Shown here one piece after another: positions 15,085 to 59,137 of a stretch of 64,000 bases of DNA. The translations under genes were made by a program, and so were the position numbers. Positions within the stretch are counted from its first letter, which is position 1. Each line of letters begins with the position of its first letter. The notes beneath the pieces were generated by a model that did no database searches, was not told where the DNA came from, and saw only the letters and a program-made list of their open reading frames with translations. The DNA is taken from positions 186,001-250,000 of IMG/VR virus record IMGVR_UViG_3300027834_000005; one strand, 5' to 3'.

Positions 15085-15417
15085 ATGTTTGAAGTAAGAA
15101 AAGAGTTGATTGATTATAAGGATGGTGATAAGCTCATCTGTGTCATTGGTGAAACGCTAAAGGCCGGAGAGTTGAGATTTCCAACTTATAAGGCTGGTGA
15201 CGTCGCGGTAGCTTACGGAGAACCGTATATTAATGCTGATGGTGCCGAATTCATTAAAGTGGTAGAATCTAGTATTATGACAGGTGACCCAATGGAACCG
15301 AGTTCTAGGTTCCTCGCAAACTTTAACGGTAAGTCTGGTAATTATCTTTTTGTGATTGAGAATAAATTAACAGACGAAGATCGATTCCATGGTAAACTGA
15401 TTGGGTGGAAAGTATGA
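15085..15417 (+). CDS. Hypothetical protein with C-terminal EEExFxxxLxG-type motif
   Basis: Ends TDEDRFHGKLIGWKV. Confidence 0.65.
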   Translation: MFEVRKELIDYKDGDKLICVIGETLKAGELRFPTYKAGDVAVAYGEPYINADGAEFIKVVESSIMTGDPMEPSSRFLANFNGKSGNYLFVIENKLTDEDRFHGKLIGWKV

Positions 15418-15998
15418 ACGAGCTAAACGCGATAAAGATCAAAAAAGATTTTAATATGGGTAGCCTAAGTCCATCATGTATACCTTGGAAAATACACGTA
15501 GGAAGCACGTACCATATAGAGCGTAGAGACGTAGGTAAGTATGTGTTGAGTAGTTATCGTTTTGATAATACAGATCGACGGGAAGCGGTGACCTATCTTT
15601 TAGAACGAGACTTAAACGTATTGTTTGAAGAAGAAGATGTTTTTATGTCAATGATAATGATGGATAATCGCAAAGACGAAGGTAAATTTGCGACTAGGGG
15701 CGTATAATGAGTTTTGCAGGCATTGGCCAGTTCAGAAAAAATCTTGACGCTCTTATGGATTCAGACGCATTTAAGAATGCTAATGAAGGTGAACGTTTGA
15801 GAATGGGCGGCATGCTAGTGAGATCTACCGGCGCTAAGTTAGACAAAAAGAAAACGAGTACCTTGCATCCTATGCACCCAAATAATATTATAAAGAAATA
15901 ACTGGAAAAATAGTTGAATGAATGTGTGAGAGAAAAAATTAGTCCGTGTGACAACCTAGTTTATAAATAGTATAAACGCATTAAAAGGGCATACACAC

Positions 15999-16955
15999 AT
16001 GGATATTCAATATTTGAAAGGACTTATCCTAGCATTAGAAGAAACGTACAGCACTACTCAAACTGTAGATAGAGATCAATTATGCTATGACGTTGTCATG
16101 TTAGACGCTATGACAAAAGCTAATAGAGGTCTGAAGGATGTTATTAAAAAGTATAGTAGTATGCTTATCGTATTAGAGAATCGTGAAAGAACAAAAACGT
16201 ACAAAAATAGACTAGAGCAATTATATGATGGTGTTGGCGTGTACGAAGCCAGTGTTATTACGGCGAGAGCTAAAGTGTTATGTGAAGAATATAAGCAGGA
16301 TAGTGAATTAGGTTTGTTAGCCACAGATAAGACTCTAGACGTGTCTATGCGAGACATAGTGCTTACTACCCAAGAAAAAATAATGAGAAATTTAGAACCT
16401 AAAGATTTCTTAGACGACACTGATATTGCGATAATTACTGACCCAGCTGTAGCCTCAAAAAATGAGAGCTTTAAGCAGAAGTCAGAAGAGCATGCTGCAG
16501 ACGTTAATAGTCAAGTGTGTAAAAACGCACAAGTATATTCTGAGAAGTTAGCCAGTGATATGTCGGTACAAGGTATTGACGTGGTAATTGAGGAAAGTGA
16601 ATTCAGTGTTATCAATCCAAGATACGACAGAGATATGTCTTCTCTACGTGGCAAAATAACTACCGCATCGGACGAAGATAGGATGGATCTAGAGAACGAA
16701 AGACAGCGCTATATGAATAGTACAGATAGAAGCTTGACTCTTAACGAGATATATAATAAGCTTCTTAACTTACGAGAAATACTTATTAGTCCTTCTGATT
16801 TTTCAGGGGTAGATGTCGATATGAAAGCAATTGACGCAATGAGGATTACATTTAGTAGTGGAGTTATGACTCCAGAAGAAACGGTTAGTATGAACGAAGA
16901 AGCATTAGAGATATTGGTGCGATACGGGATTTACGCTGATCGGTATGCCACTTAA
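15999..16955 (+). CDS. Late hypothetical protein
   Basis: 318 aa ORF preceded by TATAAATA (T4 late consensus) at ~15963. Confidence 0.65.
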   Translation: MDIQYLKGLILALEETYSTTQTVDRDQLCYDVVMLDAMTKANRGLKDVIKKYSSMLIVLENRERTKTYKNRLEQLYDGVGVYEASVITARAKVLCEEYKQDSELGLLATDKTLDVSMRDIVLTTQEKIMRNLEPKDFLDDTDIAIITDPAVASKNESFKQKSEEHAADVNSQVCKNAQVYSEKLASDMSVQGIDVVIEESEFSVINPRYDRDMSSLRGKITTASDEDRMDLENERQRYMNSTDRSLTLNEIYNKLLNLREILISPSDFSGVDVDMKAIDAMRITFSSGVMTPEETVSMNEEALEILVRYGIYADRYAT

Positions 16956-16973
16956 ATTAAAGTGATAAAGGTG

Positions 16974-17097
16974 TTGACAACTACTACATAACGTTGTATA
17001 ATAGTCGGCATCAAATGAACGAAAACTTGTTTTAGACAAAAAAAGTTCAAAAATGATAAATAAAAGTATTGACAACGATTGTAATACGTTGTATAAT
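16974..17097 (+). promoter_or_regulatory. Promoter stack for tRNA cluster 2 (two sigma70 promoters plus a late TGATAAATA)
   Basis: TTGACA-N17-TATAAT at 16974-17002 and 17069-17097; AAAATGATAAATAAAAGTATTGACAA is shared with the cluster 1 stack. Confidence 0.8.
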
Positions 17098-17140
17098 ACT
17101 CAGCATAACTTAACTAGATAATATTTCAAGGTGAAATAAC

Positions 17141-17317
17141 ATGAAAACATTGACTGCAAACATCAATACAACAACAAAGCATATTGCTATTAATAGCACG
17201 GCTGCGTGGTGTGTGATTGCGCCTATGTTTAGTGTGATAGCGGATGATAGTAATTTTAATGGCTATCCGAAGCATCAGAATCGGGTTAGAATGAAAGGTG
17301 AGACGAGAGGAATGTAA
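17141..17317 (+). CDS. Leader peptide 2 of tRNA-cluster attenuator (58 aa)
   Basis: MKTLTANINTTTKHIAINSTAAWCVIAPMFSVIADDSNFNGYPKHQNRVRMKGETRGM*; AAGGTG SD. Confidence 0.85.
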   Translation: MKTLTANINTTTKHIAINSTAAWCVIAPMFSVIADDSNFNGYPKHQNRVRMKGETRGM

Positions 17318-17570: not shown

Positions 17571-17577
17571 AATTTGT

Positions 17578-20269: not shown

Positions 20270-22021
20270 ATGAGATTTGAAGATTTAGCCAGACAGCCAA
20301 TGCGCCACGGTGATGAAAGCGTAAATTATATGTTAGTATATCATGGAGATGAAACATGGGTTCCTAGATTTAAAAGTGGTGCTATAATGACCATTGAGGC
20401 AAATCACGTTGATTATTGGAGTTCTAGTGTAACTCTCTTTAAGTATGAATGTAACGGCGTACCTGCCGATATAAGATGTGCGTCTACGGAAGATCGGTTT
20501 GTAGTTACGACTAAAATGAAAAAAGATATAGTAAGTAGCGTATACGTAAAGTGTTTTTACCCGTTAGATGTAGGCAGTCCGTTTTATAGTGATGAAGATT
20601 TATTTGAAGCCAAGTTATCTGGCGACTATGAAGCGATAAGAAAGACTTTGAGAAAAGAATTTAATGCTTGGAAAAAGGTGAACTAAGTGAAATTTGAAGA
20701 CTTAGCTAATATTAAAATGTGTGACGTCGATACTAATGTGCAGTACCTTTGTGCATACAACTCTAGTTACACTATGTCAAGTAAGCCATGTACATTAAAT
20801 CCCATGGCCATAGATGATTTTTGGTCTCAATATGTATTTGAAAAGGCGCATAAAAATGGCAGTAACTACTCACTTGGCCAAAACGGAAGATTAGTAATAA
20901 CTACTAAGATGAAAACTGAAAACCTTAATGAGCATGGTTATACCTTTTTAAATGGACACTATGTAACGTGTTTTTATCCAATAGTTGCTGATAGTCCTTA
21001 CTATAGTAATGAAGAATTATTCGAAGCTAAATTAACAGATAACTTTGTGCCGTTAATTAAGAAATTACGTAAAGCTTTTTATCATTGGAAAAAGGTGAAC
21101 TAAGTGAAATTTGAAGTATTAGCAAAGACGGAAATGGTACGTGCCGATGAGAGTGTTGATTATATCCTCGTGTACCATTCAAGTGATAAATGGTATCCGA
21201 CCACATATAAAAGAGGGACGATAGTAAAACTATCAACTACTACTGATATATATGCATCGCCATATACGTTTACTCACGTAGTTGAGCCAGACATTATCCA
21301 TACTATATCTGGTCGTAGCCACTCAGATAGATTGATAGTGACTACTAAGATGAAGCGTAGAGTTAGAAATAATATTGGGTGGAGGACATTAGATGAAGAA
21401 TCGGTTAAATGTTTTTATCCTTTAGTTGCTGATAGTCCTTATTATACTGATGAAGATTTGTTTGCCGCTAAGATCAGTAATGATTATGATGTAGTGTTTA
21501 AGAAGTTAAGAAAAGCGTTCAATGATTGGAAAAAAATTAATTGACAACGACCTTAAACTCTTATATTATATTATCTCTTTCAAGAGGTGCACGTTATGGA
21601 CTTTGCAGAATTAGCGGATATAAGAATCAGAAACGCTGACACTATATTGAAGTATATGGTAGTGTATGATTCAGTATGGCAAGAAGGCCGAGACAAGAAT
21701 ATGCCTGATGGTGACGTCGGCACAATCACTAGAACTATAGCCAAGCATACCAACTCGGAAATGTTGACTATTAGTGCCAAGGGATTGAAACATAGCATGC
21801 TTATACCCTCCGTCGTAGACTCATTGGTCGTAACGGCCAAGATTAAAAAAGAACGTAGGGGTGAATATCTGGATGTATCTGCCAAGTGCATATATCCATT
21901 AGTAGAAGGAAGTCCTTACTACGAGGATGAAGAGCTATTTGAGGCCAAGTTGTCCGGTGACTATCGTAAGTTGTACAAGAAGTTAAGAAAAGCATTTAAT
22001 GCTTGGAAGAAAGAAAACTAA
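20270..22021 (+). repeat. Tandem array of four paralogous ~140 aa genes (20270, 20687, 21104, 21587)
   Basis: Shared MxFEDLA start, VTTKMK, KCFYPL..SPYYxDEELFEAKLSGDY..LRKAFNxWKK; variable middles. Confidence 0.85.
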
Positions 22022-23821: not shown

Positions 23822-23893
23822 ACCTCTGGGACATAGGATGTCAGACGGATTCCAAACCCGTCTTACTGGGATCGTTACCTAGCAGGGGTGCCA
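23822..23893 (+). tRNA. tRNA-Trp(CCA)
   Basis: ACGGA TTCCAAA CCCGT; short D-arm; GCCA. Confidence 0.8.
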
Positions 23894-25150
23894 AACACTA
23901 AGGATATACCCATGAACGTTTTAACTATGACAGCAGTTACTAGTCGTTCGTTCGGCACGCAAGACGGGAACCTTATCGAAGAAAAAGAAACGTACCACAT
24001 ACATCCTTACACTGAAAGAAAAGGATTTGATCAGATGTACGGTATACTCGATGAAGACTACGAACATGTAGTCACTGTGTTGTTTCGATCATTATGCGTT
24101 ATATTCGGCGAAGAAGAAATATTTACTAAAGTGCTACTCGGTGAATTGGAACCTAATGTAAATCATGCATAATTCATATAAAGCCGCTAGAGAAGTAGGC
24201 ATGAACTCATTCACGTGCGTATGCACTAAGCCTACTAGATTCTTTTCTTTGAGTCCGTTAAGGGTAATAAAAAAAGATTGTATTTATTTCATTAAGCCTA
24301 GTATTCCTTTTCAGATTGACCTACCAGAGCCGGTAGTGTACGCAGTAGGCGTATTAGAAAAGATACATGGTGACCCAGACAGAAAGTTTTTTAAAGTGTT
24401 ATGTGAAGTGGATTACCAAGGTTTATTAAAAGTGTTTGATGAAGAAGATATATTTCAGCAAGTACTACTCGGTAACGTAGTAGCGGAGTGAGATATGATT
24501 ACAAAAAGAAACGGTTTTTTCATTAAGCGTTGCGCTGATTGTAGTGAAGAGTTATCGCCTACTGAGTATTTTTTCTGTCATGACTGTGAAGAGTGGCATC
24601 GACGGGCGGAAGAGATGGCTATGGAAGCTGACTTCGGCGATGAAGATGATACGTAAGTAGACTTTAATATAAATGTCTGGTATAATTAATGTGTAAAGTG
24701 ATAATCGGTAGGTAAAAAGTATGTGTGATGTTTCTAGTACTATTGAGAGCACTGTTATTCAGTGTGGCGATATTTCATTACAGGACATGGTTGCGATTGT
24801 CGTGGCTGGTTATGTGAATGAAAAAGAAGAAACTTATAGAGGCAGTAATCGCGCCGACGAATATAAAAAAGACGAGTTCTATAGATGCTTATCTAGTCTA
24901 AGTGCCACAATCAGTGACGGGCCAGACTTCGGTGGGCTGGATCGAGTTGTGCATTATCGCGCAGTAGTTGATATTGGACCTCGATTCAGAAGCTTCTTAA
25001 AAATATGTGAAGACATGAACGTGATTGTGACTGTTGATCCACTACGTATGTTAGATCTTACAGTATTGGATCGTAAGATACAGAAGTTCAATGAGTGGGC
25101 AGGCAAGGCAATCCTGACACAAGTACAAGAAGACTATAAGTAAGAACAAC

Positions 25151-25968: not shown

Positions 25969-27308
25969 ATTATTAAAATCCGGTAGGTATCAACATGATC
26001 ATAGAATGGAAACTTGAAGGTGGTGCAGTGGCACCCATGATGCACTATTCGTTGAATAGAGTGTACGATATGTTTTATCCTGTCGGCGAAAAGTTCACTA
26101 TCGAAAAGATAGGTGATGACCTATATAAGGTTACTGATCCAGATGGCAGATACGGCAAGTGGATGTTATGCCACCTAACCTCATTCTTCTCTAATGAAGA
26201 TTTATTCTTAGCTACGCTAGAAGGATTTGAATCATGACACGTGAAGACCTATTAGTCCTACTAAGAGAAGAGCTGAGTATAGATATAACTATGCCGCCAT
26301 CGAGTGGGTTCTGTTCTCCCAATATACAAATAGAGTTGCGCCTAGGTGAAGATGTAATATCCGAAGTTCAGCTTTCCGGTGATGAAATAAGAGATGCTTT
26401 GGGAGATTACTAATGTCACTAGCTGATGATTGGTTCGAAAAGGCCATGGACAGTAGTTTTGATGCGTTTAATGCTACCGCAGTAAATACTATAGGTGAGA
26501 TATTGAGTGGCGTAGATTATGTCATCAAAGCGCACTATAAGTTTAGGTTTCCGGCTGGAGTCACACCGGAATGTATAAGGTATCGAGTGTCTAGGATAGG
26601 TCCAGTGTCACATCATGTTAATAAGGGAAACCAGATTTATAATATTTGTGATATAGACTATACAGACCTGTGTTATTATTTCGGCGAAGAAGAAATATTC
26701 ACGCAGACACTGAAAGGGAACGTTATTCCCTTTTCAGAATAAACCAAATTACTAATTGACATTTTTCAAATAATGACATACTATTCCTTTTCCAACAGAG
26801 GACATCAACATGTTAGATCTAATAGACCGCCACGCAGTTTTCTTCGCAGTGTTATATTTTTCAGTTAGGGATTATTTCTCAGCAGGTAGTTCCTTGGAAG
26901 TATACATGTGGATGTTTGCTATATGTGGGTCAGTATTCTATGCTGTCACTCTTCTTCTTACGTATGTGTCTGCCAACATGGACGACGTCGAAGTGGAAGC
27001 TGAAAATAAAGACTTCGCTCTCGAATATATAACCAAGATCTTTCTAAGGTCATCTTACCAAGTAAAAGAATTCCTATGGGCGTATACCGCCGTTATGTGT
27101 GGGGCTATATTTGTCTTAATCCATAATGAGTACGTCTTCCTTCCTATTATATTGGCCATGGTGTATTCGTTCGGGGTATCAGTTAAGCTTTACTTATGTA
27201 AGGTAGTGGTACATCTAGTGACGACTGGCGTCATCAAGGTAGAATCCGATAATCAAGAAACCTAATTGACTTTAGGTTTAATTTCTCATATAATTAAGTT
27301 CAATTTAC

Positions 27309-27434
27309 GTCCTGATGGGAGTAATAGTAAGTAAGGTCCAGCGTAATAATCTGCAGATAAAGGCAGGACTGAAAGCTAAGGTAACTCCACCCCACTGAAG
27401 GGGACATTGCGTTTCGAGAGCGCTCAGGGCACCA
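27309..27434 (+). ncRNA. ~126 nt tRNA-like RNA with its own promoter
   Basis: GTCCTGA/TCAGGGC-ACCA acceptor-like stem, TTCGAGA T-loop; TTGACT..TATAAT upstream. Confidence 0.55.
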
Positions 27435-30246
27435 TTATTCTAAGAGTGACAGTTATGATACGTATGACCGCTAAAGTAGATATGTGCAAAGGCGATGTTA
27501 ATGGTTTTTGTACTGTTAGTAAAGGGTACGTATATAAGGTAACTAGTCGCAGAGCAAGCTCCAAGACCTCGCGTAAGGTTTATAGTATTCTCGCAAGTGG
27601 AAAATTCTTGGGAGAAGTATCTCATGTGCAACTGGCAATGCTGTTTGACGAGAAAGAAATATTCGAAGAGAAGTTAAAAGGGAATTTATAATCGTGCATT
27701 CATATGATAGTGGAAATATAGATAACGCTGAATCTGAAATGGGAAATATTGTCCATAGTGTAGTAATAGACATTCTAGAGACGTATGGTCCTAGAAACCT
27801 TACTGATGAAGAAATAGCTGAATTGGCTAAAAAAGTCAAGAATGATTACTCCGGTGACATCCAAGAATCCATGCATACGATCACACAGATGTGTGAGAAG
27901 ATGGAAACTGATTTTGAAGATGTAGAAACACAAAAAGAAGAATGGGAAGAGCAATGCACTTCTCAAGAAGAAGAAATAACAGCGCTACAGAATGAAAACG
28001 AAGAGTTATTATTGGTGGCTAGCGTACTGAGTAGGGAATAGTGTACAGTAGACACTCATTTCCATTAGCAGGGCACGTAGCGATGAATATGGCTGAAACA
28101 AGATCAAAAACGGCATTTAAAATCTATAAGTTTATTTGTAAGGACGTAGACGGTGAATGGCATTTCTTTAAGGAAATTTTTTGCGTTGAGAAATGCACTA
28201 CCGCCATGAGAGATCATTCTTGGCGTGAACTTGTAGTCGTTAGTCGTGCGTATATGGTAGAGGAAGAAGTGTTCAGAAGAAAATTATTAGGTACTATTGA
28301 CGAGGTATATTATGACGGATATAACAGACCCAGCAGATGCAGAACAAGGCCCAAAAGGCCCATCGGACAGCAGTAGACCTTTCCGTAATCGCAGAAAAGA
28401 AGAATTCTTCAAAAAGTTTGAAGAGATGGTTTTCTATGATATGTTGTGTGGTAACGAATGGTGGCTTGAGGGTGACGAAGATGGCGAAAGTTAGTTTTGA
28501 TGGATACGATGATGGCACTACGCCATTCGGGAGACCATTGATGAGCAGTAAACCCGTCATGCCCAAACCAGCCAAGGTCCCTAATATGTGGATTAAAGAC
28601 CATATGTTAATTGGTAAAGTAAACGGTAAGTGGGTTTTCAATGCTACGGTGTATAAGAAAATCGTAGGTATCATTGAGAGAGACTATCCTATGGAGGCTG
28701 TAGAACCTCTTGAAGTTATTATCGAAGAAGAATATTTCTTAAGAAAGCTACAGGGAACTTTATGACAACTACATTCGCGGATCTTAGAAATAAACAATCA
28801 AAAGAACGATTCCTTGCTGAGAGAAAAAGACTAGATGGAATGTATATTAGAAAATATGTCAAATGGACATATACTGATAACTGTGGCTTAGTTAAGGAGC
28901 AATACGTTTATATACGTTATGATTGTATAGCGTTCTCTGATCCTCCAGTCTTCGGCACTGCTAACAGTGTACTGACTGAAGAAGAATTCTTTATTAAGAA
29001 ATTGGCTGATGAAGTATATGAATACATAGAAGGCGGAGAAAAATAATGCTATTGCAAAAAAAAGATGCACATGTTGGCGCAGTGTTGATATGCGTGAAGG
29101 CTAGGGTTTTAGAGGACACCGACGATGAGGTGTATTATAGTCTAGGCAAAGAATATAATATCCTAGATATTAATACTAATGCAGTCACGGAAGAGCAGAT
29201 GTTACTCGATGATGATACCGGAGAAGGATTCCATTGTTGGGGCGTGAAGGAATTAACTAACCCAAATTACTCTACCTTATTCGTATTGAAGCAAGATATG
29301 TGTGAAAAAACTTTATTTCATTATAGCATTGCTAAAGACGTAAGCATCATGGAAAAATATGTGGACGACTTAAAGTCCAAGAGTAAAAAGTAATGCAAGT
29401 AATAAACAAGACTACGGTCATCATCAAAATAAAAGAATTGACTGAGTTGTTAAAGGTGTGTAAGATACCACAACACAGAGATAGGATTGAAGTTGACCTA
29501 AGATCGTATAGAGCAATAAGAAAGTTGTTCGAGGAATCAGAATGACATACACTATTGAAGTTGAATACCAAACTGGTGATAGCTTTAGTTCTGAGGTATG
29601 TACTGAGACGATTGGTCATGTATGGGAAGACAAAACACTCGCACGTAAAGCGTTACAATGCCTAAAAGAGCATTACGAATTGTTTATTGAGCACGAAGAG
29701 CATAACAGGCCTAGACGGCATATGCGTTCATACTTAGACGTCCGTATAGATGCTAAGTCCAGAGAATGGCATAATGGCGATAAAGACATGTATAGATGCT
29801 GCGACGTGGAGATGGACGATGGTAGTAAAAGAACATTACCGACCTGTATGTGGTGCGGATACTTTGAAAAACTTCATCATGCCAAAATCGTATGTGAGCA
29901 AGATGACGAAGACTATGTGAGTTTCTGATGGGGAATGAATATAATAACCAAACTTTCTTCTTGACCTTAAAACGAAAAACTAGTACTATATACGTAATGT
30001 AAATGAGACCACGAACATGAAAGAATGGACACGGCTAATTGGTGCTAATGGGTATAACTCTAGTAATGAGCCTACTGAAGCAGGCACCTATGAAGTTCGT
30101 TTAGAGTGGTATGCCGACGAAAGTAATTTTCAAAATGTCCTTTGTGTTCTTTCGTACGATGAAGAAGGCGCTGAATGGCGACTTGCGGACGGAATGGGCG
30201 AAATTAGTTATAGTTGGAATATAGCCGCATGGCGAAAGGTGTAGAT

Positions 30247-30588
30247 ATGTCTGATAAAAAAGAGGGTTACGAATTATCTTTTAAGGAACAGATGGAAGGT
30301 CTGATCGAAGGTAATATGCAGAACTTCCCAGACGCTATGGCGTGGGTAAGAAAGCAATTAGATAGAACTGATGTTACAAAAATCTACACTGAGCTTGAAT
30401 TATTCCAGCAAGCTTTGGACGGTACTAGTGAATGGGCCGGTCATCCAGACCCTAATGAATTTGGTAAGGTTGAACTTATCAAATGGTACAGAAATAAGCA
30501 CGGAGTAGGTTTGAAACAGGCAAAGGATAAATGTGATCAATACATGATTATCCATTACCCAGTATACACCTTCTCTTACAGATCGTAA
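30247..30588 (+). CDS. Protein with ribosomal bL12 C-terminal-domain-like motif
   Basis: KVELIKWYRNKHGVGLKQAKDKCD resembles L7/L12 KIxVIKxVRxxTGLGLKEAKDxVE. Confidence 0.55.
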   Translation: MSDKKEGYELSFKEQMEGLIEGNMQNFPDAMAWVRKQLDRTDVTKIYTELELFQQALDGTSEWAGHPDPNEFGKVELIKWYRNKHGVGLKQAKDKCDQYMIIHYPVYTFSYRS

Positions 30589-31830
30589 TTGATATGAAAA
30601 ATTTTATTTTAGTTGCTATTAAATCAAGTTGGTGGGATGGTACAAACTTCACACTCGAAGTTATCGATACCGCAACAGCAATGCCAAGCGAAAATGGTGG
30701 CGAGCACTGGACACGTATTGATAGGGAAGGGGGGTTCATAATCCCTTATAAAACTTCAGATGCTCAATATCCTTTTTGGATAGAAGATTCTGATGAAGGT
30801 AGATCATTAGCCACTGTGTTAATTTTAGAATCGTGGGAAAAAAGAGTGGCAGAAAAAGAAGATGGTCTAGTGAAAGAAAGAGAATCTTTGGATGAGCAGA
30901 TAGAACGTATTGAAGTATTAAGGAATTCTGTTTGTGATGTGATACCTTTACCTGACGAATAAAACTTTTTACGGGCATACCATATGGGATGGCAAGCTGA
31001 GGGGAAACCTAACACGCGTCTGGCTCGATACCAGATATGTCCACTTATTTTTTGACTTAACCTTAACCATACGGAGAAAAAGTATGAAAAAAAGTCGTGA
31101 AGAACGTCGCATTGAAGCGGCAGGTCGTGCCAAGTCTTATACTTGGGCAAACTCTAAGGCTAAACGCCTTGGCACATCAACTGAGAAGGAGTGGAGTGAG
31201 AGAAACTCACAAATCTCTGCGTAACAGTTACAAATGGGGTATCTTAGGGTGCCCCTGAAATTTTCTATAATGTTGGTGACGGCAATGAGCACAGAAACAA
31301 TTTTTAAAACCTACAGAGGTGTAAAATATACGTTAGATAAGTCTGACAGAGGATTTATGCTTTCTACATGGTATTCATTGACCTCAGAGTACATTTTCGA
31401 ACGTACTATCACAGATATTTCTAAGTCTGATGAAAACATTGAACAGCTAATACGTGATGGTTTTGTATTGCCTGTTGGTGAAGAAAGCGAACCCGAATAA
31501 TGGCCAGATATCCAAGAAAAGAAGACATTGTGATAGGTGGAAAATCCGTCAATATAAATCCTAAAGATATTTATTTTGGTAAAGGTGCATCTCAACAATA
31601 TGGTGCTGAATATCTCATTGAAGAGATGAGTAGTGATAAGCCCTTCTCCGGTAACGTAAAAGTTCGCAGAGTTGATGATATTGCCAAGGGATATTGGTTA
31701 AGTAAGACATTTTATTGCCTAACACATCTAATCCTCGAAGAGGAAGAAAGATTCATGATAGAACTCATGGGCGGCGACACTAACAACATTAAGATAGACA
31801 ACATCCCTCTAACCGAAGAAGAGATGAGAA

Positions 31831-32703
31831 ATGAAAACAAATAGCATACGAGTACGTTTAGATCAAGATCACGTCCATGTCACCAGTAAGGTGTTTAGTG
31901 GCGGCGAGATTCATGTCGATATCGATAGTCTTCCGGCTAAATGTCATGATTATACGATCAAAGCGCGTTTACAAAGCAGCGAAGACATTATGCACTTCCT
32001 TACTCTCTGTGATGCTATGTGGCGTCGTTATCCAGAGGCCCATGGAAAGGTAACCATTCCGTATTTGCCATATGCAAGACAAGATCGCATGTGTTCTAAA
32101 GGACAGCATTTCGGTTTACATGTCATGTCCCAATTATTATCTACTATACCACAAAAAACAATCACTACCTATGACCTTCATAGTAAAGTGGCGTCATCTT
32201 TGTTAGCGGAAGACGGTTTTGGTGTAATAGACATCCAGCAATATGATATCTTAATGAAGCATAGCTTAGGCGAAGACCTTGCAGACGGACGATTACGTCT
32301 AGTGTCACCGGATAAGGGCGCTAAGGATAAAACTGCACAGGTAAGTTCATTTTGTAACAGTAAAATGTCTACCATCGTGGGCGGTAAGACCAGAGATCCT
32401 AAGACTGGTAAGATTACCGAGTTCACAGTTGATGAAGATGACCTATGCGGTCAAGATTTACTCATTGTTGACGATATTTGTGATGGTGGCGGCACATTCA
32501 TTGGTCTTGCTGATGAATTGAAGAAACGTGGAGCTGGAGAAATCAGCTTATTCGTAACACACGGAATCTTCTCTAGAGGGTTCGACGGATTCTCTGGGCT
32601 TATTGATCATATCTATACGACTGACTCGTTCCGACGTAGTTCAGATTTACCATTTAATGGCGTAGTGGCGGAGAATGTAACTCTGACCACTATTAAGGTG
32701 TAG
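31831..32703 (+). CDS. prs: Ribose-phosphate pyrophosphokinase-like protein (Adps of NARP1-like pathway)
   Basis: FSGGE, PYLPYARQDR, DLHS, SPDKGA, LIVDDICDGGGTF, VTHGIFS motifs. Confidence 0.9.
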   Translation: MKTNSIRVRLDQDHVHVTSKVFSGGEIHVDIDSLPAKCHDYTIKARLQSSEDIMHFLTLCDAMWRRYPEAHGKVTIPYLPYARQDRMCSKGQHFGLHVMSQLLSTIPQKTITTYDLHSKVASSLLAEDGFGVIDIQQYDILMKHSLGEDLADGRLRLVSPDKGAKDKTAQVSSFCNSKMSTIVGGKTRDPKTGKITEFTVDEDDLCGQDLLIVDDICDGGGTFIGLADELKKRGAGEISLFVTHGIFSRGFDGFSGLIDHIYTTDSFRRSSDLPFNGVVAENVTLTTIKV

Positions 32704-38516: not shown

Positions 38517-38872
38517 TTTCTATTTTTGGCAAAGATCCTTACCGTTATGTTGATAACTTTGAGCTAGCTAGTACTGCGTGCGCTAAATTACTCGCAACGA
38601 CCTCTCGCAACCATGGGTGGGTTATTGATTTCAATAAAAGCGTTACTGACTGCCTTAATGAAGATTGTTCAGTTAATGATTTATTAGTTGAAGGGTATGC
38701 TGTGCCAGTAGATAGCATTATGAATCTTATGCACAAGCACAACATAGGCATCCATCCTTTAGGCAATAACAAATGGAAAGCTGTGCACGAATCTACCCAT
38801 GTCGAATACAAAGATAGAGATCCTGACAGAGCAGTTCTAATTGTTTTTGCAGAGATAACTGGCGGTGTATAA
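38513..38872 (+). CDS. NinX/DUF2591-like hypothetical protein
   Basis: LMHKHNIGI..W.A..PDRAVLIVF pattern. Confidence 0.35.
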   Translation: MISIFGKDPYRYVDNFELASTACAKLLATTSRNHGWVIDFNKSVTDCLNEDCSVNDLLVEGYAVPVDSIMNLMHKHNIGIHPLGNNKWKAVHESTHVEYKDRDPDRAVLIVFAEITGGV

Positions 38873-39244
38873 TGATTAAAATAGGCATGGTATTCAAAAA
38901 TACTACGTATTCACCAATGCTTGATGTGGACGAAAATGCGCACCTCTTTATTTCTGACATCTATCATAGTGATGTTCATGGTGAGAAAGTAATTTGGTTC
39001 ACTAATGAGCACGGAAAGAGACTTGGTTATTTTAGATACGAAGCTCTTGTCATTGCCCTTGATGATGACGGTAACTTGGATAGTTTATCCTCGGATTTCT
39101 ACGCGTTCAAATACATAGGTACATTAACAGATGAAGACATGTTCCAATATCATTTATCTGGTAAAATATGCATTTAGGATATTAGTGGACAACAAGTTAA
39201 ACTTCACATATACTATATCACTTACATAAATCAACGGAGTAAAC

Positions 39245-43325: not shown

Positions 43326-43759
43326 ATATGTCGTACAAGAAAAACGAAATTCACCCGTGGACAGTGATAGGAATGACGCTCACTATGCCCATTATGCTAT
43401 CTGTTATCGTGACAGGAAGTAATATATTACTGCATTTATGGGCGGTACTTGGGATGGTCACCGTTCTGGCATACGGCGTGTGTAGTAGGAAGTATATAGG
43501 GAAAGAACCATATAACGCAGAAGCGGACATCACAGTGGCGTTTAGTGTTATTTTCGTATGTTATATGTGTGGGCCAGCTTTTGGGTGCCAATTTTTCTAT
43601 GATAACCGCATGGAATTTAAGTCATACGCCAGAATAGCTAACAGGGGATATATATTCCCTACCAAAAAGAATAAAGAAATACATTTCCTAAAAAGATTAA
43701 ATGGGGAATTAAAAGAATAAACATTTGCATGTGATATGAAATGTATGTTATAATGCTCA

Positions 43760-44130: not shown

Positions 44131-44481
44131 TTGATAATGGACAAGCACGGCCCAGTTTTAATTAATATGATACGTAGAACAGTACCGAAATTGATAGCGG
44201 AAGATCTAGTGGGTGTACAGCCTATGATATCACCTATTGCCCGATGGGAAAAATATCATGTAGTTTGGGTAATCACGACAAGCGGTGAGTTGGTATGTAA
44301 TGGCGATGTGTATATGCTAGCGAATTACGTCAACGACAAATTCACATGTAACCTAGGTGAAGTGCTAAGCGAAGAAGAGTATTTCCTAAGAGAGCTTGAT
44401 GGCTCCAATAAAGAATTAGATAATATTACTGACGTAGGTAAGGTTTTTTCCCTAAAGACTAGATATAACAGAAACATATAG
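44131..44481 (+). CDS. Small protein carrying a T4 gp23 Gol-region-like segment
   Basis: PVLINMIRRTVPKLIAEDLVGVQPMISP ... GKVFSLKTRY. Confidence 0.65.
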   Translation: MIMDKHGPVLINMIRRTVPKLIAEDLVGVQPMISPIARWEKYHVVWVITTSGELVCNGDVYMLANYVNDKFTCNLGEVLSEEEYFLRELDGSNKELDNITDVGKVFSLKTRYNRNI

Positions 44482-53686: not shown

Positions 53687-53878
53687 ATGATAGCATGTAT
53701 ATGTAACAACATAAAACAAAGTGACGTAGTGGAAGCCTTAGAGGGTTTAGATAACCCTGAAGATTTACACGAAGCATTGGGCACGAGTGTCCAGTGCGGG
53801 TCATGCCTTACACACATTAAAGAGGTCTTCGATGGCATTGCAGCAAACCGAGTGCAAAAAATTCGTATTGTACAATAA
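53687..53878 (+). CDS. bfd: Bacterioferritin-associated ferredoxin-like protein
   Basis: MIACICN....QCGSC [2Fe-2S] motif. Confidence 0.8.
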   Translation: MIACICNNIKQSDVVEALEGLDNPEDLHEALGTSVQCGSCLTHIKEVFDGIAANRVQKIRIVQ

Positions 53879-54067
53879 CGATACAGGAAAATTTAGATCA
53901 AGTAAAACCAGTAAGCGTTCCTATGGTAAATTCTCCATGGCTAATGTTTACAAGTATGAACATCTAGCCAGAAAAGCTAAGAACAACGACGACGTTATAA
54001 TCCCTATCACTATAAAAATAGATGAAGCGGATATATTCATGACTGTTCTCGCAGGAGACAAGAAGTC

Positions 54068-54556
54068 ATGATGTGGTTAAAAATGTTAACCAGTAAGGCT
54101 GGTCTGTCCATCATCGCCATTACTATTTTGTCTCTGGCTGCGTATGGCGGATATAAGTATGTCACCCATCTCCAGTATACTGTCGCTGAACAATCTGAAG
54201 AGATTACGGGACTCAAGAAAGATCTCAAGGACAAGGAGACCATCATCGTTAAGATGAAGGCTGACTACACCGCACAGAACAAACTGAAGAAGAAGCTAAG
54301 TCGAGATAAGACGGCACTGAATAGTCAGTTGGTAGAGCTATCAAAGTCTTTTAATAAGGTAAGAGCGAACGGCACCAAGAGAGATCTTGGGGCTTTAGCG
54401 TTAGGCAAGCCAAAATTAGTGGAGAATATCATCAACGCTGCCACTAGAAATGTCATAAGGTGCGCAGAGATGGCATCAGGTTCTGTCCCCTTAGAGGGAG
54501 AGAAGAATAGTAAATGTCAGCATATAGTTGATTCATTTAAGGTGGCAGAACAGTGA
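54068..54556 (+). CDS. Inner-membrane spanin (Rz-like)
   Basis: N-terminal TM, coiled coil, KPKLVENIIN; overlaps a downstream lipoprotein. Confidence 0.7.
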   Translation: MMWLKMLTSKAGLSIIAITILSLAAYGGYKYVTHLQYTVAEQSEEITGLKKDLKDKETIIVKMKADYTAQNKLKKKLSRDKTALNSQLVELSKSFNKVRANGTKRDLGALALGKPKLVENIINAATRNVIRCAEMASGSVPLEGEKNSKCQHIVDSFKVAEQ

Positions 54557-56820: not shown

Positions 56821-56849
56821 AAAAAAAGGTGACCTAAGTCACCTTTTTT
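56821..56849. terminator. Bidirectional intrinsic terminator
   Basis: AAAAAAAGGTGAC CTAA GTCACCTTTTTT between convergent genes. Confidence 0.85.
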
Positions 56850-56862
56850 AGTTGTGTTCCGA

Positions 56863-57669
56863 TTAAGGAGCTGCAACTGTTACTGTAGGATTAGCAACAT
56901 AACCTGCGCCAGCATTACCGACAGAGATTGTGTCAACTACGTCACCGATAAGGGCAGAAGTAGCTGTAGCTTGAGTCTTGGTAACTGCAGAAATAGTAAC
57001 TGTCTCATCACCAACATAGTCAGTGTTACCGCCAGAAGCAGTGATAGAAGTAACCACACCGTTAGTTAGAACAGCTGTGAATGTAGCGCCAGTACCAGTA
57101 CCGCCAGATTGAGTTACTGTAGGTGCAGATGCATAGCCAGAACCGCCGTTAGAGATAAGGGCAGATTGGTCAGCGTCAGGGTCAGCAGCAGTTTGTGCAA
57201 CGAAACCAGATACGGTAGCGTCAGTCGCGTCAGGCGCAGACAACGTAACTACTGGAGCACCAGCATATCCGCCGCCGCCATCAGTTACTGTGATAGCATC
57301 AACAGTGTACGATGCAGTAATAGATGCAGAAGCAGTAGCAGGACCGAATCCTTCAACAGTTAACGCAGGAACTAATGTACCAACTACGTTACCGGCACCA
57401 TCTCTCCACACGCCACTTTCAGTACCGTCGAAGTAATACATTCTGTATTGGGTGATTTTACTTACATTTTTACCGTTGTGAGTCAATTGACCTTCAGTGG
57501 CAGTTGCAGGAACGCCATCAGTAAGGGTAACTCTGCCAGATGCAACGTCATATTTGCGTGATCCAGTCTGTTTGATAATTGGCTCGTCGCCAGATGTAGT
57601 TGTTAGTGTTAGGTCACCTGTAGCGCCGTCTTTGGCAGTGAACCATTTTTTCTTAATTGGTCTTCCCAT
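56863..57669 (-). CDS. Virion structural protein (Ala/Thr-rich repeats)
   Basis: MGRPIKKKWF start; GGxGY..APxVT repeats; late promoter upstream. Confidence 0.7.
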   Translation of the reverse strand: MGRPIKKKWFTAKDGATGDLTLTTTSGDEPIIKQTGSRKYDVASGRVTLTDGVPATATEGQLTHNGKNVSKITQYRMYYFDGTESGVWRDGAGNVVGTLVPALTVEGFGPATASASITASYTVDAITVTDGGGGYAGAPVVTLSAPDATDATVSGFVAQTAADPDADQSALISNGGSGYASAPTVTQSGGTGTGATFTAVLTNGVVTSITASGGNTDYVGDETVTISAVTKTQATATSALIGDVVDTISVGNAGAGYVANPTVTVAAP

Positions 57670-58019
57670 GGGGGATTCTCCTGTTTATTTAGTTACATGG
57701 AGAAACATGTGAATTTTGACTTCTCCAGTTATGGATACGTGGTCGCAATATCGGAGATATGCTTACGTATATGCATCTATTTATCAGAATTGTAATATTG
57801 TGTTTTTTTATGAATATGATAAGTATAGGTATAGTTCCAAATATTTGACTGTCACCGGAAGAGATGTTATAATGAATAGAATATGTACTGCTACTAAGTT
57901 AGAGTTTAGCGAGTATAGTTATGCCAAAGTTTTATGGGAGAGAGATCCTGTGCGTATCTGTCCCCATTGCAGAATCGCAGTAAATGTCGGGTTCTTCAAT
58001 ACGCATCCAAACATGAATA

Positions 58020-58745
58020 GTGAAAAGAAGAATGAATGATGTGAGAGTTACTAGAGTACTACATAGAAAAAGTAATACGCCTCGGTCTGCTGAGTCTAAG
58101 TCTTTTGTTGAGAGATCTGCCAAATATTCTAATATGGCTTATCTTCCTGAAGAGAACATCAGAAATAGACTGACATCTGAGGGCGCTACTAAGATCTTTA
58201 TATATTCATATGAGGGTATGTTGGCTTTCATGGCAGAACTCGAACACGATATAGTCGTATCCTTCAGGGGCGTAGATACGGCTGCAGAATTCAAGACTAT
58301 AATGAAATTCTGGAAACGCGATCAGTGCGGTGTCCAAGTTCATTCTGGATTTGCAGAGAGCGTAGATAAGTTCTCCAGATTCATAATCCACGATATAAAC
58401 GTCATGTCTAAGAACAAAAAAATACTTTATACCGGCCATTCTTTTGGCGGGGCAATGGCATTACTCTTGACATTAAACCATAAACCTGATATTATATGCA
58501 CATTCGGTGCCCCTAAAGCTGGGGGAGGAATAGGCTTTACTAAGCTATTCGAAGGCATAGAGGTCCATAGAGTACAGACTAAGTCTGATTTTGTTACCTT
58601 GTTGCCGCCTAGCATACCTATGTTGATGGAATATGATCATGTGGGTGACTTGGTACAGCTCGATGGCATTGTCCATCCGTATGAGACGCACAGGATGCGT
58701 ATCTACACAAAAGCGGTCATAAGGAAAGAAAGAAATGTCACGTAG
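58020..58745 (+). CDS. Class 3 lipase
   Basis: VSFRG, VHSGF, TGHSFGGA, TFGAP, D.V..LP motifs. Confidence 0.85.
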   Translation: MKRRMNDVRVTRVLHRKSNTPRSAESKSFVERSAKYSNMAYLPEENIRNRLTSEGATKIFIYSYEGMLAFMAELEHDIVVSFRGVDTAAEFKTIMKFWKRDQCGVQVHSGFAESVDKFSRFIIHDINVMSKNKKILYTGHSFGGAMALLLTLNHKPDIICTFGAPKAGGGIGFTKLFEGIEVHRVQTKSDFVTLLPPSIPMLMEYDHVGDLVQLDGIVHPYETHRMRIYTKAVIRKERNVT

Positions 58746-59137
58746 TGGATTTTTTGATGAGGACGATGGAATGAGAAAATATAGTAGTAAAGACGATTTC
58801 TTATATGAAATGTTAAAGAGTAATGTGAGCGGTCATACGATCAAGAGCGCAACAAAGAAGAGAACATCTCCGATGCAAGAAACTAGTAAAAGAAAACGTG
58901 ATACCCTCCAAGAGAGAAACTATTACATGATGCCCACCAAGATAGAGCAATACGCGGATCTGGCAGTTATCAAAGCTTTCTATACCGGACAGGCAACTGG
59001 CAAGGTCGTTCCTGTGGCCATTGGTGGTTACCTTACTATGGCCTTTGAGGTTGAAGCAGACGCCTTTTTGCATAAGGCTAGTGGCTGGGAAGGTATGATT
59101 ATGGAATTACTTGATTATTAAGACTGGGGAATAGAAC

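What the first reader, a model, noticed from the sequence alone, without database searches (positions are those of the whole stretch)
15085..59121. A shared C-terminal EEExFxxxLxG tag on more than 30 small proteins from many unrelated families
Seen near the C-termini: 15085 TDEDRFHGKLIG; 20270 SDEDLFEAKLSG (and 3 paralogs); 23912 GEEEIFTKVLLG; 24165 DEEDIFQQVLLG; 25995 SNEDLFLATLEG; 26413 GEEEIFTQTLKG; 27455 DEKEIFEEKLKG; 28041 VEEEVFRRKLLG; 28297 FEEMVFYDMLCG; 28481 IEEEYFLRKLQG; 28762 TEEEFFIKKLAD; 30247 TELELFQQALDG; 31500 EEEERFMIELMG; 35481-37420 EDEDKMLLKLAY-type; 38872 TDEDMFQYHLSG; 40671-42261 KKLFEDKLRG-type on membrane proteins; 43328; 44131 SEEEYFLRELDG; 53832 DEADIFMTVLAG; 58735. 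The N-terminal parts are mostly unrelated. Inference: a modular amphipathic-helix docking tag that recruits diverse cargo domains to one common partner (a phage scaffold, chaperone, protease or host complex), forming an adaptor or effector library.
Basis: partly seen in the sequence, partly recalled or inferred. Interest (0 to 1): 0.8.

Follow-up and report, generated by a model that had tools for sequence, protein, structure and literature searches.

The report
Shared C-terminal helix on phage proteins
A giant uncultured phage ends dozens of its small early proteins with the same short, self-capped helix, mostly on one hugely expanded family of tiny beta-barrel proteins but also on other protein types, which suggests a common handle on variable heads whose binding partner is unknown.

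Summary
An acidic-F-x-x-x-L-x-G motif sits near the C-terminus of about 27-31 small plus-strand ORFs. The strict pattern gives 12 hits against 0.04 expected, and none on the minus strand. Synonymous codons vary freely, so selection acts on the protein.

"Many unrelated families" is overstated. The window belongs to a 347-kb T4-like jumbo phage from metagenomes. Two other regions of that genome hold tandem arrays with the same ending, giving more than 70 tagged genes in about 95 kb. These genes sit behind perfect sigma-70 promoters, so they are probably early.

The arrays are one family. Each member is modelled as a five-stranded Tudor/SH3-like barrel (pLDDT 83) followed by this helix. The motif reads like a textbook capped helix: L-[ST]-[DE]-E-[DE]-h-F...L-x-G. 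Five window ORFs are detectable members.

The helix also follows MORN repeats, and probably other architectures. The barrel also occurs without it. So the helix is partly portable.

No Pfam, PHROG or cultured-phage relatives were found. Related arrays occur in other metagenomic phages, each with its own tail variant.

The best reading is a constant docking or assembly helix on variable heads. A purely structural family signature remains a strong rival. The partner was not identified.

The parts
15085..15417 (+). Small ORF (110 aa). Motif TDEDRFHGKLIG at nt 15370-15405, 3 aa before the stop. Detectable member of the barrel+helix family.
   Evidence: hhalign to the family profile: 76% probability over 70 columns. 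Left-out score 7.2 against a null maximum of 5.0. Sigma-70-like promoter at 15032-15060.
15405..15707 (+). Small ORF (100 aa). Degenerate motif EEEDVFMSMIMM at nt 15627-15662.
   Evidence: Weak: 6.4 bits. BLAST similarity to 23888.
20270..22021 (+). Family A: four tandem paralogues (20270-20686, 20687-21103, 21104-21544, 21587/21596-22021; 138-146 aa). Each ends CFYPL..SPYY[ST][DN]E[DE]LF[EA]AK[LI][ST][GDN] plus a 20-aa extra helix.
   Evidence: BLAST E 1e-20 to 1e-37 among them. Motifs at nt 20588, 21005, 21446 and 21923. Left-out scores up to 11.4. AF2 model: five strands at low confidence, then helices 108-117 (the motif) and 121-137 at pLDDT 82-86.
23888..24172 (+). Family B member (94 aa). 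GEEEIFTKVLLG at nt 24107-24142.
24165..24491 (+). Family B member (108 aa). DEEDIFQQVLLG at nt 24438-24473.
   Evidence: left-out score 10.5
25995..26237 (+). Small ORF (80 aa). SNEDLFLATLEG at nt 26190-26225. Barrel-family member.
   Evidence: N-terminal-only profile E 7e-4. hhalign 86%. Left-out score 10.7.
26413..26742 (+). Family B member (109 aa). GEEEIFTQTLKG at nt 26683-26718.
27407..27691 (+). Family B member (94 aa; an independent gene call gives 78 aa). DEKEIFEEKLKG at nt 27647-27682.
   Evidence: Promoter at 27266-27294.
28041..28376 (+). ORF (111 aa). VEEEVFRRKLLG at nt 28257-28292, with a 27-aa tail that overlaps the next ORFs. Not called as a gene in the ENA assembly.
28312..28494 (+). 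Small ORF (60 aa) in another frame. Weak variant FEEMVFYDMLCG at nt 28417-28452.
   Evidence: Called as a gene. Sequence. Fails the strict pattern.
28559..28765 (+). Small ORF (68 aa by the gene call; the longest ORF starts at 28337). IEEEYFLRKLQG at nt 28721-28756.
   Evidence: BLAST link to 44131.
28762..29046 (+). Small ORF (94 aa). TEEEFFIKKLAD at nt 28975-29010.
   Evidence: left-out score 7.8
29046..29393 (+). Barrel-family member (115 aa) whose C-terminal motif has decayed (CEKTLFHYSIAKD).
   Evidence: N-terminal-only profile E 1.4e-8 and full profile E 1.9e-11. Sequence.
30214..30588 (+). ORF (119-124 aa). TELELFQQALDG at nt 30388-30423, internal, with 54 aa following. Weak instance.
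   Evidence: left-out score 2.6, borderline
31500..31844 (+). Small ORF (114 aa). EEEERFMIELMG at nt 31737-31772. Probable barrel-family member.
   Evidence: Full profile E 6e-5 over residues 6-94. hhalign aligns 77 columns.
35481..37420 (+). Group C: 35481-35876, 35854-36153, 36332-36709, 36711-37076 and 37079-37420. The variant has M or F, then ...L, and the chain ends 0-6 aa later (EDKMLYQLTY, EDRFLFKLVQ*, RDVMLMRLSY*, QDQMYLKLAL, EDKMLLKLAY).
   Evidence: Only 35854 passes the left-out test. The same 'chain ends at +6' variant fills the L141 array of the same genome.
38872..39177 (+). Small ORF (101 aa). TDEDMFQYHLSG at nt 39127-39162. Barrel-family member.
   Evidence: hhalign 90%. Full profile E 3.5e-5.
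40671..42261 (+). Family D: four paralogous multi-pass membrane proteins (128-144 aa). They end in a basic cluster plus LF..KL.G (RNKKLFHDKLSG and similar).
   Evidence: BLAST links. At least two hydrophobic segments each. Net charge +2 against -2.3 for the soluble motifs. They fail the left-out test.
43328..43720 (+). Three-TM membrane protein (130 aa) ending NKEIHFLKRLNG. It has a homologue inside the array of a related phage.
   Evidence: BLAST E 8e-10 to L126:4126-4521. Fails the left-out test.
44131..44481 (+). ORF (116 aa). Residues 5-37 are a fragment of a T4-type major capsid protein. A beta-rich stretch follows, then SEEEYFLRELDG at nt 44368-44403 and 25 more aa.
   Evidence: Pfam Gp23, 37.6 bits, E 2e-9. 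phrog_138. Sequence.
53787..54071 (+). Small ORF (94 aa; 79 aa by the gene call). Weak variant DEADIFMTVLAG at nt 54021-54056.
   Evidence: left-out score 1.6
58735..59121 (+). ORF (128 aa). VEADAFLHKASG at nt 59050-59085. Doubtful, because A replaces the conserved L.
   Evidence: No score above noise.

Best explanation
The motif is a short alpha-helix capped at both ends. Read against textbook helix-capping rules (my reading, not a tool result):
- L-[ST]-[DE]-E-[DE]-h is a hydrophobic staple plus capping box at the helix start.
- F and L, four residues apart, form one hydrophobic face.
- Gly, or the chain end itself, is the C-cap.

This helix is the constant C-terminal module of a very large set of small proteins of one uncultured 347-kb T4-like jumbo phage. 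These proteins are probably made early. More than 70 such genes are visible in about 95 kb.

Most carriers descend from one family: a roughly 70-residue, five-stranded Tudor/SH3-like barrel with very variable sequence and loop lengths, followed by the helix. The helix has also been joined to other N-terminal modules, and the barrel also occurs without it.

Inferred working model: variable heads bind different targets, and the constant helix docks them all onto one common partner or into one common assembly. That would make an adaptor or effector library deployed at the start of infection.

Shown: the motif, its enrichment, protein-level selection, its conservation relative to the rest of each protein, the family, the arrays, the promoters and the mixed architectures. 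The fold is supported only by one AF2 model and weak Foldseek matches.

Inferred: that the helix binds something outside its own chain, and that all carriers share one partner.
For: 1. Enrichment, C-terminal position and strand specificity.

2. Independent validation. The model trained only on window instances scores at least 6 bits on 13 plus-strand ORFs in L125 and none on the minus strand. Twelve of the 13 are at protein C-termini. The thirteenth hits the N-terminus of an array gene and is spurious. The same model finds 9 of 22 proteins upstream in L141.

3. Synonymous codons vary freely.

4. The motif block is far more conserved than the rest of the protein: 46% vs 17% pairwise identity.

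5. AF2 on a 24-sequence alignment gives pLDDT 83 and pTM 0.73. The model has strands 14-17, 30-38, 44-49, 54-58 and 68-70, then helix 76-85 (the motif), then helix 87-95. Foldseek's best matches are Tudor, KOW and SH3-like barrels.

6. Modularity.
- MORN-repeat proteins carry the motif in this phage (L141:369-758) and in a related one (L128:773-1177). They are orthologous (E 2e-9) and the motif is aligned.
- A capsid-protein fragment carries it.
- 223-235-aa proteins carry it.
- Barrel-only tandem repeats occur without the helix, in P0018.

7. Each array or phage lineage has its own uniform ending on otherwise divergent paralogues: L.G plus a few residues (window), hGG plus a second helix (L125), LSx at the chain end (L141), LSGRLP (other metagenomes), and QLHRDVDQL (L126).

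8. Early expression. Perfect TTGACA-17-TATAAT promoters lie on the coding strand in intergenic gaps. One sits directly after a terminator at the head of the L125 array.
Against: - No partner was identified, and no complex prediction could be run.
- The helix has the highest confidence in the AF2 model (pLDDT 93 for residues 71-80). That suggests it packs on its own barrel, so F and L may be buried inside the molecule.
- I could not read the model coordinates to check this.
- Uniform endings within an array can also come from tandem duplication of one founder.
- The membrane-protein cases lack the acidic half and are not statistically the same motif.
- In L126 the tail of the membrane protein (WRRLGGGV) does not follow the tail of that phage's soluble family (QLHRDVDQL).
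- For window families A, B and C, neither shared nor different folds could be shown.
Confidence: 0.5

Rival explanations
1. The motif is only a structural family signature. The helix caps the beta-barrel of one fast-evolving paralogous family. It is conserved because the domain needs it to fold, and there is no common partner. Window families with no detectable N-terminal similarity would simply be members that diverged too far. The non-barrel cases would come from local recombination or chance.
For: - The motif reads like a textbook capped helix that directly follows the last strand. It has the highest pLDDT in the model.
- Within the family it is part of a longer conserved block that includes that strand, hFhPxDxL....
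- Five window ORFs are detectable full-length members.
- Family A keeps the FYPL strand and aligns weakly to barrel members in its N-terminal part too.
- All soluble carriers are small and look beta-rich (my reading of the sequences).
- A designed protein and a DinB-like protein in the PDB show the same strand-then-[ST]DEE.F transition.
Against: - Core positions of a fold normally keep their character, not their identity. Here the acidic residues, F and G are near-invariant while the barrel has drifted to 17% identity.
- The helix is kept on MORN-repeat orthologues.
- The barrel exists in tandem repeats without any such helix.
Confidence: 0.3
2. The motif is a turnover signal. The helix would be recognised by an AAA+ protease, either the phage's own soluble FtsH-like enzyme or a host one. 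Early proteins would then be removed on schedule, or the carriers would act as adaptors that deliver bound host proteins for degradation.
For: - The genome encodes a soluble FtsH-like protein with no membrane segment and intact Walker A, Walker B and HEAGH motifs.
- That gene sits among tagged genes. Its end overlaps a run of small membrane-protein genes, one of which carries the motif.
- The window also carries a real two-piece tmRNA, a PTH2 hydrolase, an M17 aminopeptidase and a papain-like peptidase.
- The tmRNA tag ANEELYAQAA resembles the first half of the motif (NEELF, NEDLF).
Against: - This rests on gene neighbourhood only, and tagged genes are common throughout these regions.
- From my own knowledge, known C-terminal degrons need fixed last residues. 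Here 0-27 variable residues follow the motif.
- Nothing tests binding.
Confidence: 0.1
3. The motif is a membrane-targeting amphipathic helix of the MinD or FtsA kind.
For: 43328 ends HFLKRLNG, and family D ends in a basic cluster plus LF..KL.G. From memory, the E. coli MinD tail reads FLKRLFGG. These carriers are membrane proteins.
Against: - The soluble motifs carry a net charge of -2.3 over 13 residues.
- Their helical hydrophobic moment is average: 0.30 against 0.295 for random segments.
Confidence: 0.04
4. The motif is a capsid-targeting or packaging signal, like the T4 capsid-targeting sequence, or a cleavage site for the prohead protease.
For: - The phage is T4-like: gp13, a sheath protein and a capsid-protein fragment.
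- [SG]-x-E just before the helix resembles, from memory, cleavage motifs reported in giant phages.
Against: - The genes sit behind perfect sigma-70 promoters in tRNA-rich, non-structural regions.
- No T4-type late promoter motif is enriched: TATAAATA occurs 4 times against 7 expected.
- Multi-pass membrane proteins would not be packaged.
Confidence: 0.03
5. The conserved thing is a nucleotide-level element, such as a recombination site, a regulatory RNA or a promoter, that happens to be translated.
For: GAA GAA GAx runs recur in the motif.
Against: - F, L and G use all their synonymous codons in near genome-wide proportions.
- The distance to the next gene varies.
- The motif lies in the reading frame of the ORF in all three plus frames and never on the minus strand.
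Confidence: 0.01

Closest known systems
Paralogous gene arrays of jumbo phages
   Same: [quoted passage not shown] Here tandem arrays of 9 to 23 small genes lie in one 347-kb phage.
   Different: These copies are not highly similar: 17% identity outside the motif. The family has no Pfam or PHROG model. The conserved part is a short C-terminal helix that also sits on other architectures.
Poxvirus ankyrin/PRANC (F-box-like) multigene families (from my own knowledge)
   Same: A large virus encodes many paralogues with a variable binding part and a short conserved C-terminal helical element. That element docks all of them onto one host machine. This is the closest analogy for how the phage system may work.
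   Different: Those are eukaryotic viruses with a different and longer motif and a known partner (Skp1). There is no sequence relation. Here docking is not shown.
SspB-type protease adaptors (from my own knowledge)
   Same: A small beta-rich substrate-binding domain is followed by a short C-terminal peptide that tethers it to an AAA+ unfoldase.
   Different: No sequence or profile match. In SspB a long flexible linker separates the two parts. Not tested here.
RyR repeat domain (Pfam PF02026)
   Same: The family profile's best PDB sequence matches are RyR repeats, through the segment HP-x-LVPYD-x-L-[PT]-x-x-EK(F). That segment mirrors hFhPYDxL[ST]xEEKF (E 0.011 and 0.004 for the whole chain).
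   Different: Per-repeat E-values are not significant (16). No member hits the Pfam RyR model. The part before the segment is modelled as a beta-barrel here.
Tudor / KOW / SH3-like small beta-barrels
   Same: These are the best structural matches of the modelled N-terminal domain: 53BP1 Tudor, the ribosomal eS4 barrel and the ERCC6-L2 Tudor. Foldseek probability is 0.8-0.97 over 53-67 columns.
   Different: E-values are 0.06-0.4 and TM-scores about 0.4, so this is fold-level resemblance only. None of those domains carries this helix.
T4 capsid-targeting sequence (from my own knowledge)
   Same: A short shared peptide on otherwise unrelated proteins of a T4-type phage.
   Different: That sequence is N-terminal, is removed by the prohead protease, and sits on late proteins. 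This one is C-terminal and sits on genes with early-type promoters.

Membership tests
Barrel+helix family defined here (alignments A2 and A4) | N-terminal barrel region matches a profile built without the motif | tested here: met
   Met for 29046 (E 1.4e-8) and 25995 (7e-4). Borderline for 15085 (0.02) and 31500 (0.05). Not met for families A, B, C, D and E.
Barrel+helix family defined here (alignments A2 and A4) | Profile-profile alignment extends beyond the 12-17 motif columns | tested here: inconclusive
   It extends for 38872 (35 columns, 90%), 25995 (55, 86%), 15085 (70, 76%) and 31500 (77, 41%). Only the motif aligns for A, B, C, D and E. Weak two-segment hits link family A to barrel members.
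Tudor/SH3-like beta-barrel fold | Five-stranded small barrel with significant structural similarity to known members | tested here: inconclusive
   The model has five strands at pLDDT 83. Foldseek probability reaches 0.97, but E is at least 0.06 and TM-score about 0.4. BFVD matches are only uncharacterised phage proteins.
RyR domain (PF02026) | Match to the Pfam model at or near its threshold | tested here: not met
   None of the 24 members hits RyR at E up to 1. Only a 14-20-residue segment matches RyR chains in the PDB.
MinD/FtsA-type membrane-targeting helix | Basic, strongly amphipathic C-terminal helix | tested here: not met
   Soluble carriers have net charge -2.3 and an average hydrophobic moment. 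The five membrane-protein variants are basic (+2.2), but they are already membrane-embedded.
ssrA-like or other C-terminal degrons | Fixed residues at the extreme C-terminus | tested here: not met
   Tails after the motif are 0-27 residues long with no common last residues.
Ubiquitin-like modifiers with a processed C-terminal Gly | Beta-grasp fold with a Gly or Gly-Gly end after a strand | tested here: not met
   The modelled fold is a barrel plus helix, and the Gly lies at a helix end. Group C and the L141 array lack the Gly altogether.
T4 capsid-targeting sequence | N-terminal position, late expression, removal at an L-x-E site | tested here: not met
   The motif is C-terminal. The promoters are of the sigma-70 type. 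Cleavage cannot be tested with these tools.
   No complex prediction or experiment was available. Only indirect support: modular distribution and conservation.

The most novel reading that the evidence does not exclude
The phage runs a split, FtsH-like proteolysis system. A soluble AAA+/M41 protease has lost its own membrane anchor. It is recruited through this helix by small membrane proteins and by more than 70 barrel, MORN and other adaptors. Each adaptor presents a different host protein for destruction early in infection. The system would work alongside the phage's own tmRNA, PTH2 hydrolase and peptidases. It would be a bacterial-virus counterpart of the F-box adaptor libraries of poxviruses and giant viruses.
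Probability: 0.1. Interest if true: 0.9.

Novelty: new variant of a known kind. Interest (0 to 1): 0.6.

Why it matters
If the counts from the sampled regions hold, this family would make up a large share of a giant phage's genes. It has no Pfam or PHROG model and no relative in cultured phages.

Its anatomy is a hypervariable small barrel plus an invariant capped helix. The same helix also sits on MORN repeats and probably on other modules. This is the layout expected for a library of binders that share one handle. Such libraries are known from large eukaryotic viruses but, as far as these searches show, not from phages.

The partner could be found with one pull-down. Finding it could assign a role to dozens of 'hypothetical' early genes at once, and could point to a host or phage hub that giant phages target.

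If instead the helix is only a fold element, the result is still useful.

Tried and rejected
- **Pfam and PHROGs on about 30 tagged ORFs:** no family. The one exception is the capsid-protein fragment in 44131.
- **tblastn of three family proteins against GenBank phages:** no match.
- **Word-indexed search of 5.8 billion proteins with alignment A1:** only the phage's own proteins came back.
- **ESM Atlas for 24165:** stored model has pLDDT 0.36 and the look-alikes are at noise level.
- **Family A structure:** the barrel part of the model is too uncertain (pLDDT 61). Its Foldseek search gave nothing usable.
- **First IMG/VR pattern scan:** A stricter pattern ran to completion. It showed multi-copy hits only in this phage, and the ten single hits elsewhere lie inside unrelated large proteins.
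- **Two literature searches:** no description of such a motif.

Readings considered and dropped are given as rivals: a DNA-level element, a late or capsid signal, a ubiquitin-like Gly end, and a MinD-like membrane helix. The likeness between the tmRNA tag and the motif is recorded only as a curiosity.

I did not survey the remaining roughly 250 kb of the genome. I could not read the AF2 model coordinates, so burial of F and L is unknown.

Full report
**What the window is**

The window is part of IMGVR_UViG_3300027834_000005, a 347,232-bp viral contig. The same genome appears as a 347,153-bp ENA contig and as a 410,284-bp JGI contig that repeats one end.

It is a T4-type jumbo phage. It has a gp13-like head-tail protein, a sheath protein and a fragment of a T4-type capsid protein.

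Positions 6-60 kb are a one-strand block of small genes. The block also holds:
- 35 tRNA genes and a genuine two-piece tmRNA
- NAD-salvage genes
- a PTH2 peptidyl-tRNA hydrolase, an M17 aminopeptidase, a papain-like peptidase and an RNase T-like exonuclease

The strongest sigma-70-type promoter matches, including perfect TTGACA-17-TATAAT sites, all lie on the coding strand in intergenic gaps. The T4 late-promoter motif is not enriched. I read this block as an early region transcribed by host RNA polymerase.

Yes.
- The strict pattern [DE][DE].F...L.G occurs in 12 called proteins, always in the last 40 residues. Shuffles give 0.04.
- The three plus frames have 4 hits each and the minus frames none.
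- A degenerate DNA version hits 5 times against 0.00 in shuffles.
- Codons for the conserved F, L, G and E use all synonymous forms in near genome-wide proportions. Selection is therefore on the peptide, not the DNA.

I also left each BLAST-defined family out of the model in turn. Nine of 14 independent groups still scored above all 540 shuffled proteins. The membrane-protein variants (40671-42261, 43328), most of the M-for-F group (35481-37420), 53787 and 30214 did not. 58735 and the ORF at 28312-28494 were never in that test, and I judge them weak by eye. The robust core is about 20 ORFs. 'More than 30' needs the weak ones.

**Are the carriers unrelated?**

Only in part. All-against-all BLAST gives four paralogue groups: A (4 genes), B (4), D (4 membrane proteins) and a loose group C, plus singletons.

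The decisive evidence came from outside the window. A pattern scan of IMG/VR found another piece of the same genome (L064). Fetching around it gave two regions:
- **L125** holds a tandem array of 23 genes of 84-115 aa. All end L[ST][DE]E[DE]KFxhxhGG plus a second short helix.
- **L141**, further upstream, holds an array of about ten genes that end [MT][ST][DE]E[DE]xFxxxLSx, with the chain stopping at +6.

The motif model trained only on window instances gives 13 hits of at least 6 bits on the coding strand of L125. Twelve are at protein C-termini and one is a spurious N-terminal match. It also recovers 9 proteins in the L141 part, and nothing in a structural-gene stretch. That is independent confirmation.

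By eye, the window has about 29 carriers, L125 about 27 and L141 about 15. That is more than 70 in roughly 95 kb.

The L125 array starts right after a strong terminator followed by a perfect sigma-70 promoter.

**The family**

The array genes are clearly one family (alignments A2 and A4). Pairwise identity is 17% outside the motif and 46% inside it. Ten of the 15 most informative columns lie in the C-terminal block.

AlphaFold2 on the 24-sequence alignment gave a confident model (pLDDT 83, pTM 0.73). It has five strands, then helix 76-85 (the motif), then helix 87-95. Foldseek's best matches are Tudor, KOW and SH3-like barrels. These are fold-level matches only, with E at least 0.06. BFVD returns only uncharacterised small phage proteins.

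An exhaustive HMMER search of 1.84 billion representatives found 93 proteins at E of 0.001 or better. Many come from other metagenomes and keep the block hFhPxDxL[ST][DE]x[DE]xFxhxL[SG]G. No member has a Pfam hit.

Two short contigs from other phages carry tandem arrays of the family:
- **L126:** every copy ends [FV]LFQLHRDVDQL. Its DUF2201 protein is 53% identical to ours.
- **L128:** the copies end LSG/MSG plus a helix. I have no direct measure of how closely this phage is related to ours.

**Which window ORFs belong to it**

A profile of only the N-terminal barrel finds 29046 (E 1e-8). The same profile finds 25995 (7e-4), with 15085 and 31500 borderline.

Profile-profile comparison aligns 38872, 25995, 15085 and 31500 far beyond the motif. 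For families A, B, C, D and E only the motif columns align.

Family A keeps the preceding FYPL strand and gives weak, in-register N-terminal hits to barrel members. Its AF2 model was too uncertain in the beta part (pLDDT 61) to settle the fold.

**What the motif is**

Read against the textbook rules for helix ends (my own knowledge), L-[ST]-[DE]-E-[DE]-h is a hydrophobic staple plus capping box. F and L four residues apart make one hydrophobic face. The Gly, or the chain end, is the C-cap. The whole motif is therefore a short helix capped as well as a helix can be.

The same strand-to-helix transition turns up in a designed protein, in a DinB-like protein and, most closely, in RyR repeats (HPxLVPYDxLxxEEK(F)). 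Whole-chain E-values there are 0.011 and 0.004, but per-repeat values are not significant and there is no Pfam RyR hit. I treat the RyR likeness as a lead only.

**Module or fold element?**

For a portable module:
- The helix follows MORN repeats in this phage and in L128. These proteins are orthologues at 27% identity with the motif aligned.
- It follows a capsid-protein fragment.
- It sits near the end of 223-235-aa proteins.
- The barrel occurs as tandem repeats with no helix at all, in P0018, in a phage replication module.
- Each array or lineage has its own uniform ending on otherwise very divergent copies.

For a mere fold element:
- The helix is the most confident part of the model, which suggests it packs on its own barrel.
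- It belongs to a longer conserved block that includes the last strand.
- Uniform endings can be founder effects of tandem duplication.

The membrane-protein cases share only hF..KL.G, are basic rather than acidic, and fail the left-out test. I do not count them as evidence either way. In L126 the membrane protein's tail does not follow that phage's soluble-family tail.

**Mechanism and odds**

I put 0.5 on a constant docking or assembly helix on variable heads, meaning an early-expressed adaptor or effector library with an unknown partner. I put 0.3 on a purely structural family signature. About 0.1 goes to a turnover or adaptor signal for an AAA+ protease.

The protease idea has one concrete hook. 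The genome encodes a soluble FtsH-like protein with intact Walker A, Walker B and HEAGH motifs and no membrane segment. It lies among tagged genes. Its stop overlaps a run of small membrane-protein genes, one of which is tagged.

A DUF2201 VWA/metallopeptidase gene lies next to arrays in both this phage and L126. These are candidates, not findings.

Membrane targeting, capsid targeting and a DNA-level element are each unlikely, for the reasons given under the rivals.

**Novelty**

Gene arrays in jumbo phages are known in general (PMC13282480). This family has no model in Pfam or PHROGs and no relative in GenBank phages.

In a complete IMG/VR scan, the [DE]EEKF...hGG form is multi-copy only in this contig.

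A shared C-terminal helix on several architectures in a phage was not found in two literature searches. I rate it a new variant of a known kind, with moderate to high interest that depends on finding a partner.

Noticed in passing
window 43760-44118 (+): A genuine two-piece (permuted) tmRNA. Rfam gives beta_tmRNA 85.5 bits and tmRNA_permuted 81.6 bits. ARAGORN reads the tag peptide as ANEELYAQAA. The first half of that tag resembles the acidic-aromatic start of the motif (NEELF, NEDLF). The betaproteobacterial type may hint at the host.
   Followed up: partly
window 7278-25544 (+): 35 tRNA genes on one strand, interleaved with small ORFs, some with duplicated anticodons. Rfam confirms 32 of them. 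It also adds a weak extra candidate at 19083-19143.
   Followed up: partly
window 44131-44481 (+): A 116-aa ORF starts right at the tmRNA end. Its residues 5-37 match the most conserved N-terminal segment of T4-type major capsid proteins (Pfam Gp23, 37.6 bits). It continues into a beta-rich stretch and the motif. This is a capsid-gene fragment recruited into a small early protein.
   Followed up: partly
L125:1372-3306 (same genome, about 119 kb downstream of the window end): A soluble FtsH-like protein (AAA+ plus peptidase M41). It has Walker A GLTGVGKT, Walker B LLLDE and HEAGH, and no membrane segment. Its stop overlaps the first of three small membrane-protein genes. Nearby are RtcB, a thioredoxin, a macro-domain protein and an NAD-dependent DNA ligase.
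   Followed up: partly
window 31831-34495, 38058-40669, 42759-46498 (+): A block of auxiliary genes: a PRPP-synthetase-like gene and a nicotinamide/nicotinate phosphoribosyltransferase (NAD salvage), a PTH2 peptidyl-tRNA hydrolase, an M17 leucyl aminopeptidase, an RNase T-like exonuclease, a papain-family C1 peptidase and an RNase H-like protein.
   Followed up: partly
window 28041-28765 (+): Three overlapping ORFs in three frames, each carrying a motif copy. An independent gene call keeps 28312-28494 and 28559-28765 but not 28041-28376. This could be a sequencing frameshift, real overlapping genes or a decaying copy.
   Followed up: partly
window 16974-17097 (+); L125 8035-8101: Two perfect TTGACA-17-TATAAT promoters lie 95 nt apart in the window. 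In L125 a 10-bp-stem terminator is followed 15 nt later by another perfect promoter at the head of the 23-gene array.
   Followed up: no
L125 9349-13675; L126 3354-7088: A subset of the barrels shares an acidic loop, V-x-D-D-[DE]-x-D-x-x-[DN]-x-W-x-W (for example DDDRDDTDPWKW). It is conserved between two phages. It could be a metal-binding or ligand site.
   Followed up: no
L141:1147-2361 and L126:625-1866: A DUF2201 protein (putative metallopeptidase plus VWA-like domain) is 53% identical between the two phages. In both it lies just upstream of an array of the tagged family.
   Followed up: partly
window 1857-5177 (-): Four adjacent minus-strand paralogues of 196-325 aa share their N-terminal parts (BLAST E 1e-6 to 1e-14). 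There is a weak hit to a virion structural protein PHROG. This is probably the edge of a structural module.
   Followed up: no
window 47603-50351 (+): A 659-aa protein matches phrog_1745 ('DNA transfer protein', E 7e-175) and has an N-terminal helix-turn-helix. The gene before it (252 aa) shares that N-terminal part and ends in a hydrophobic segment.
   Followed up: no
window 17730-18230 (+): An ORF ending ...CANCHREVH... looks like an HNH endonuclease lying among the tRNA genes. This is judged from the sequence motif only.
   Followed up: no
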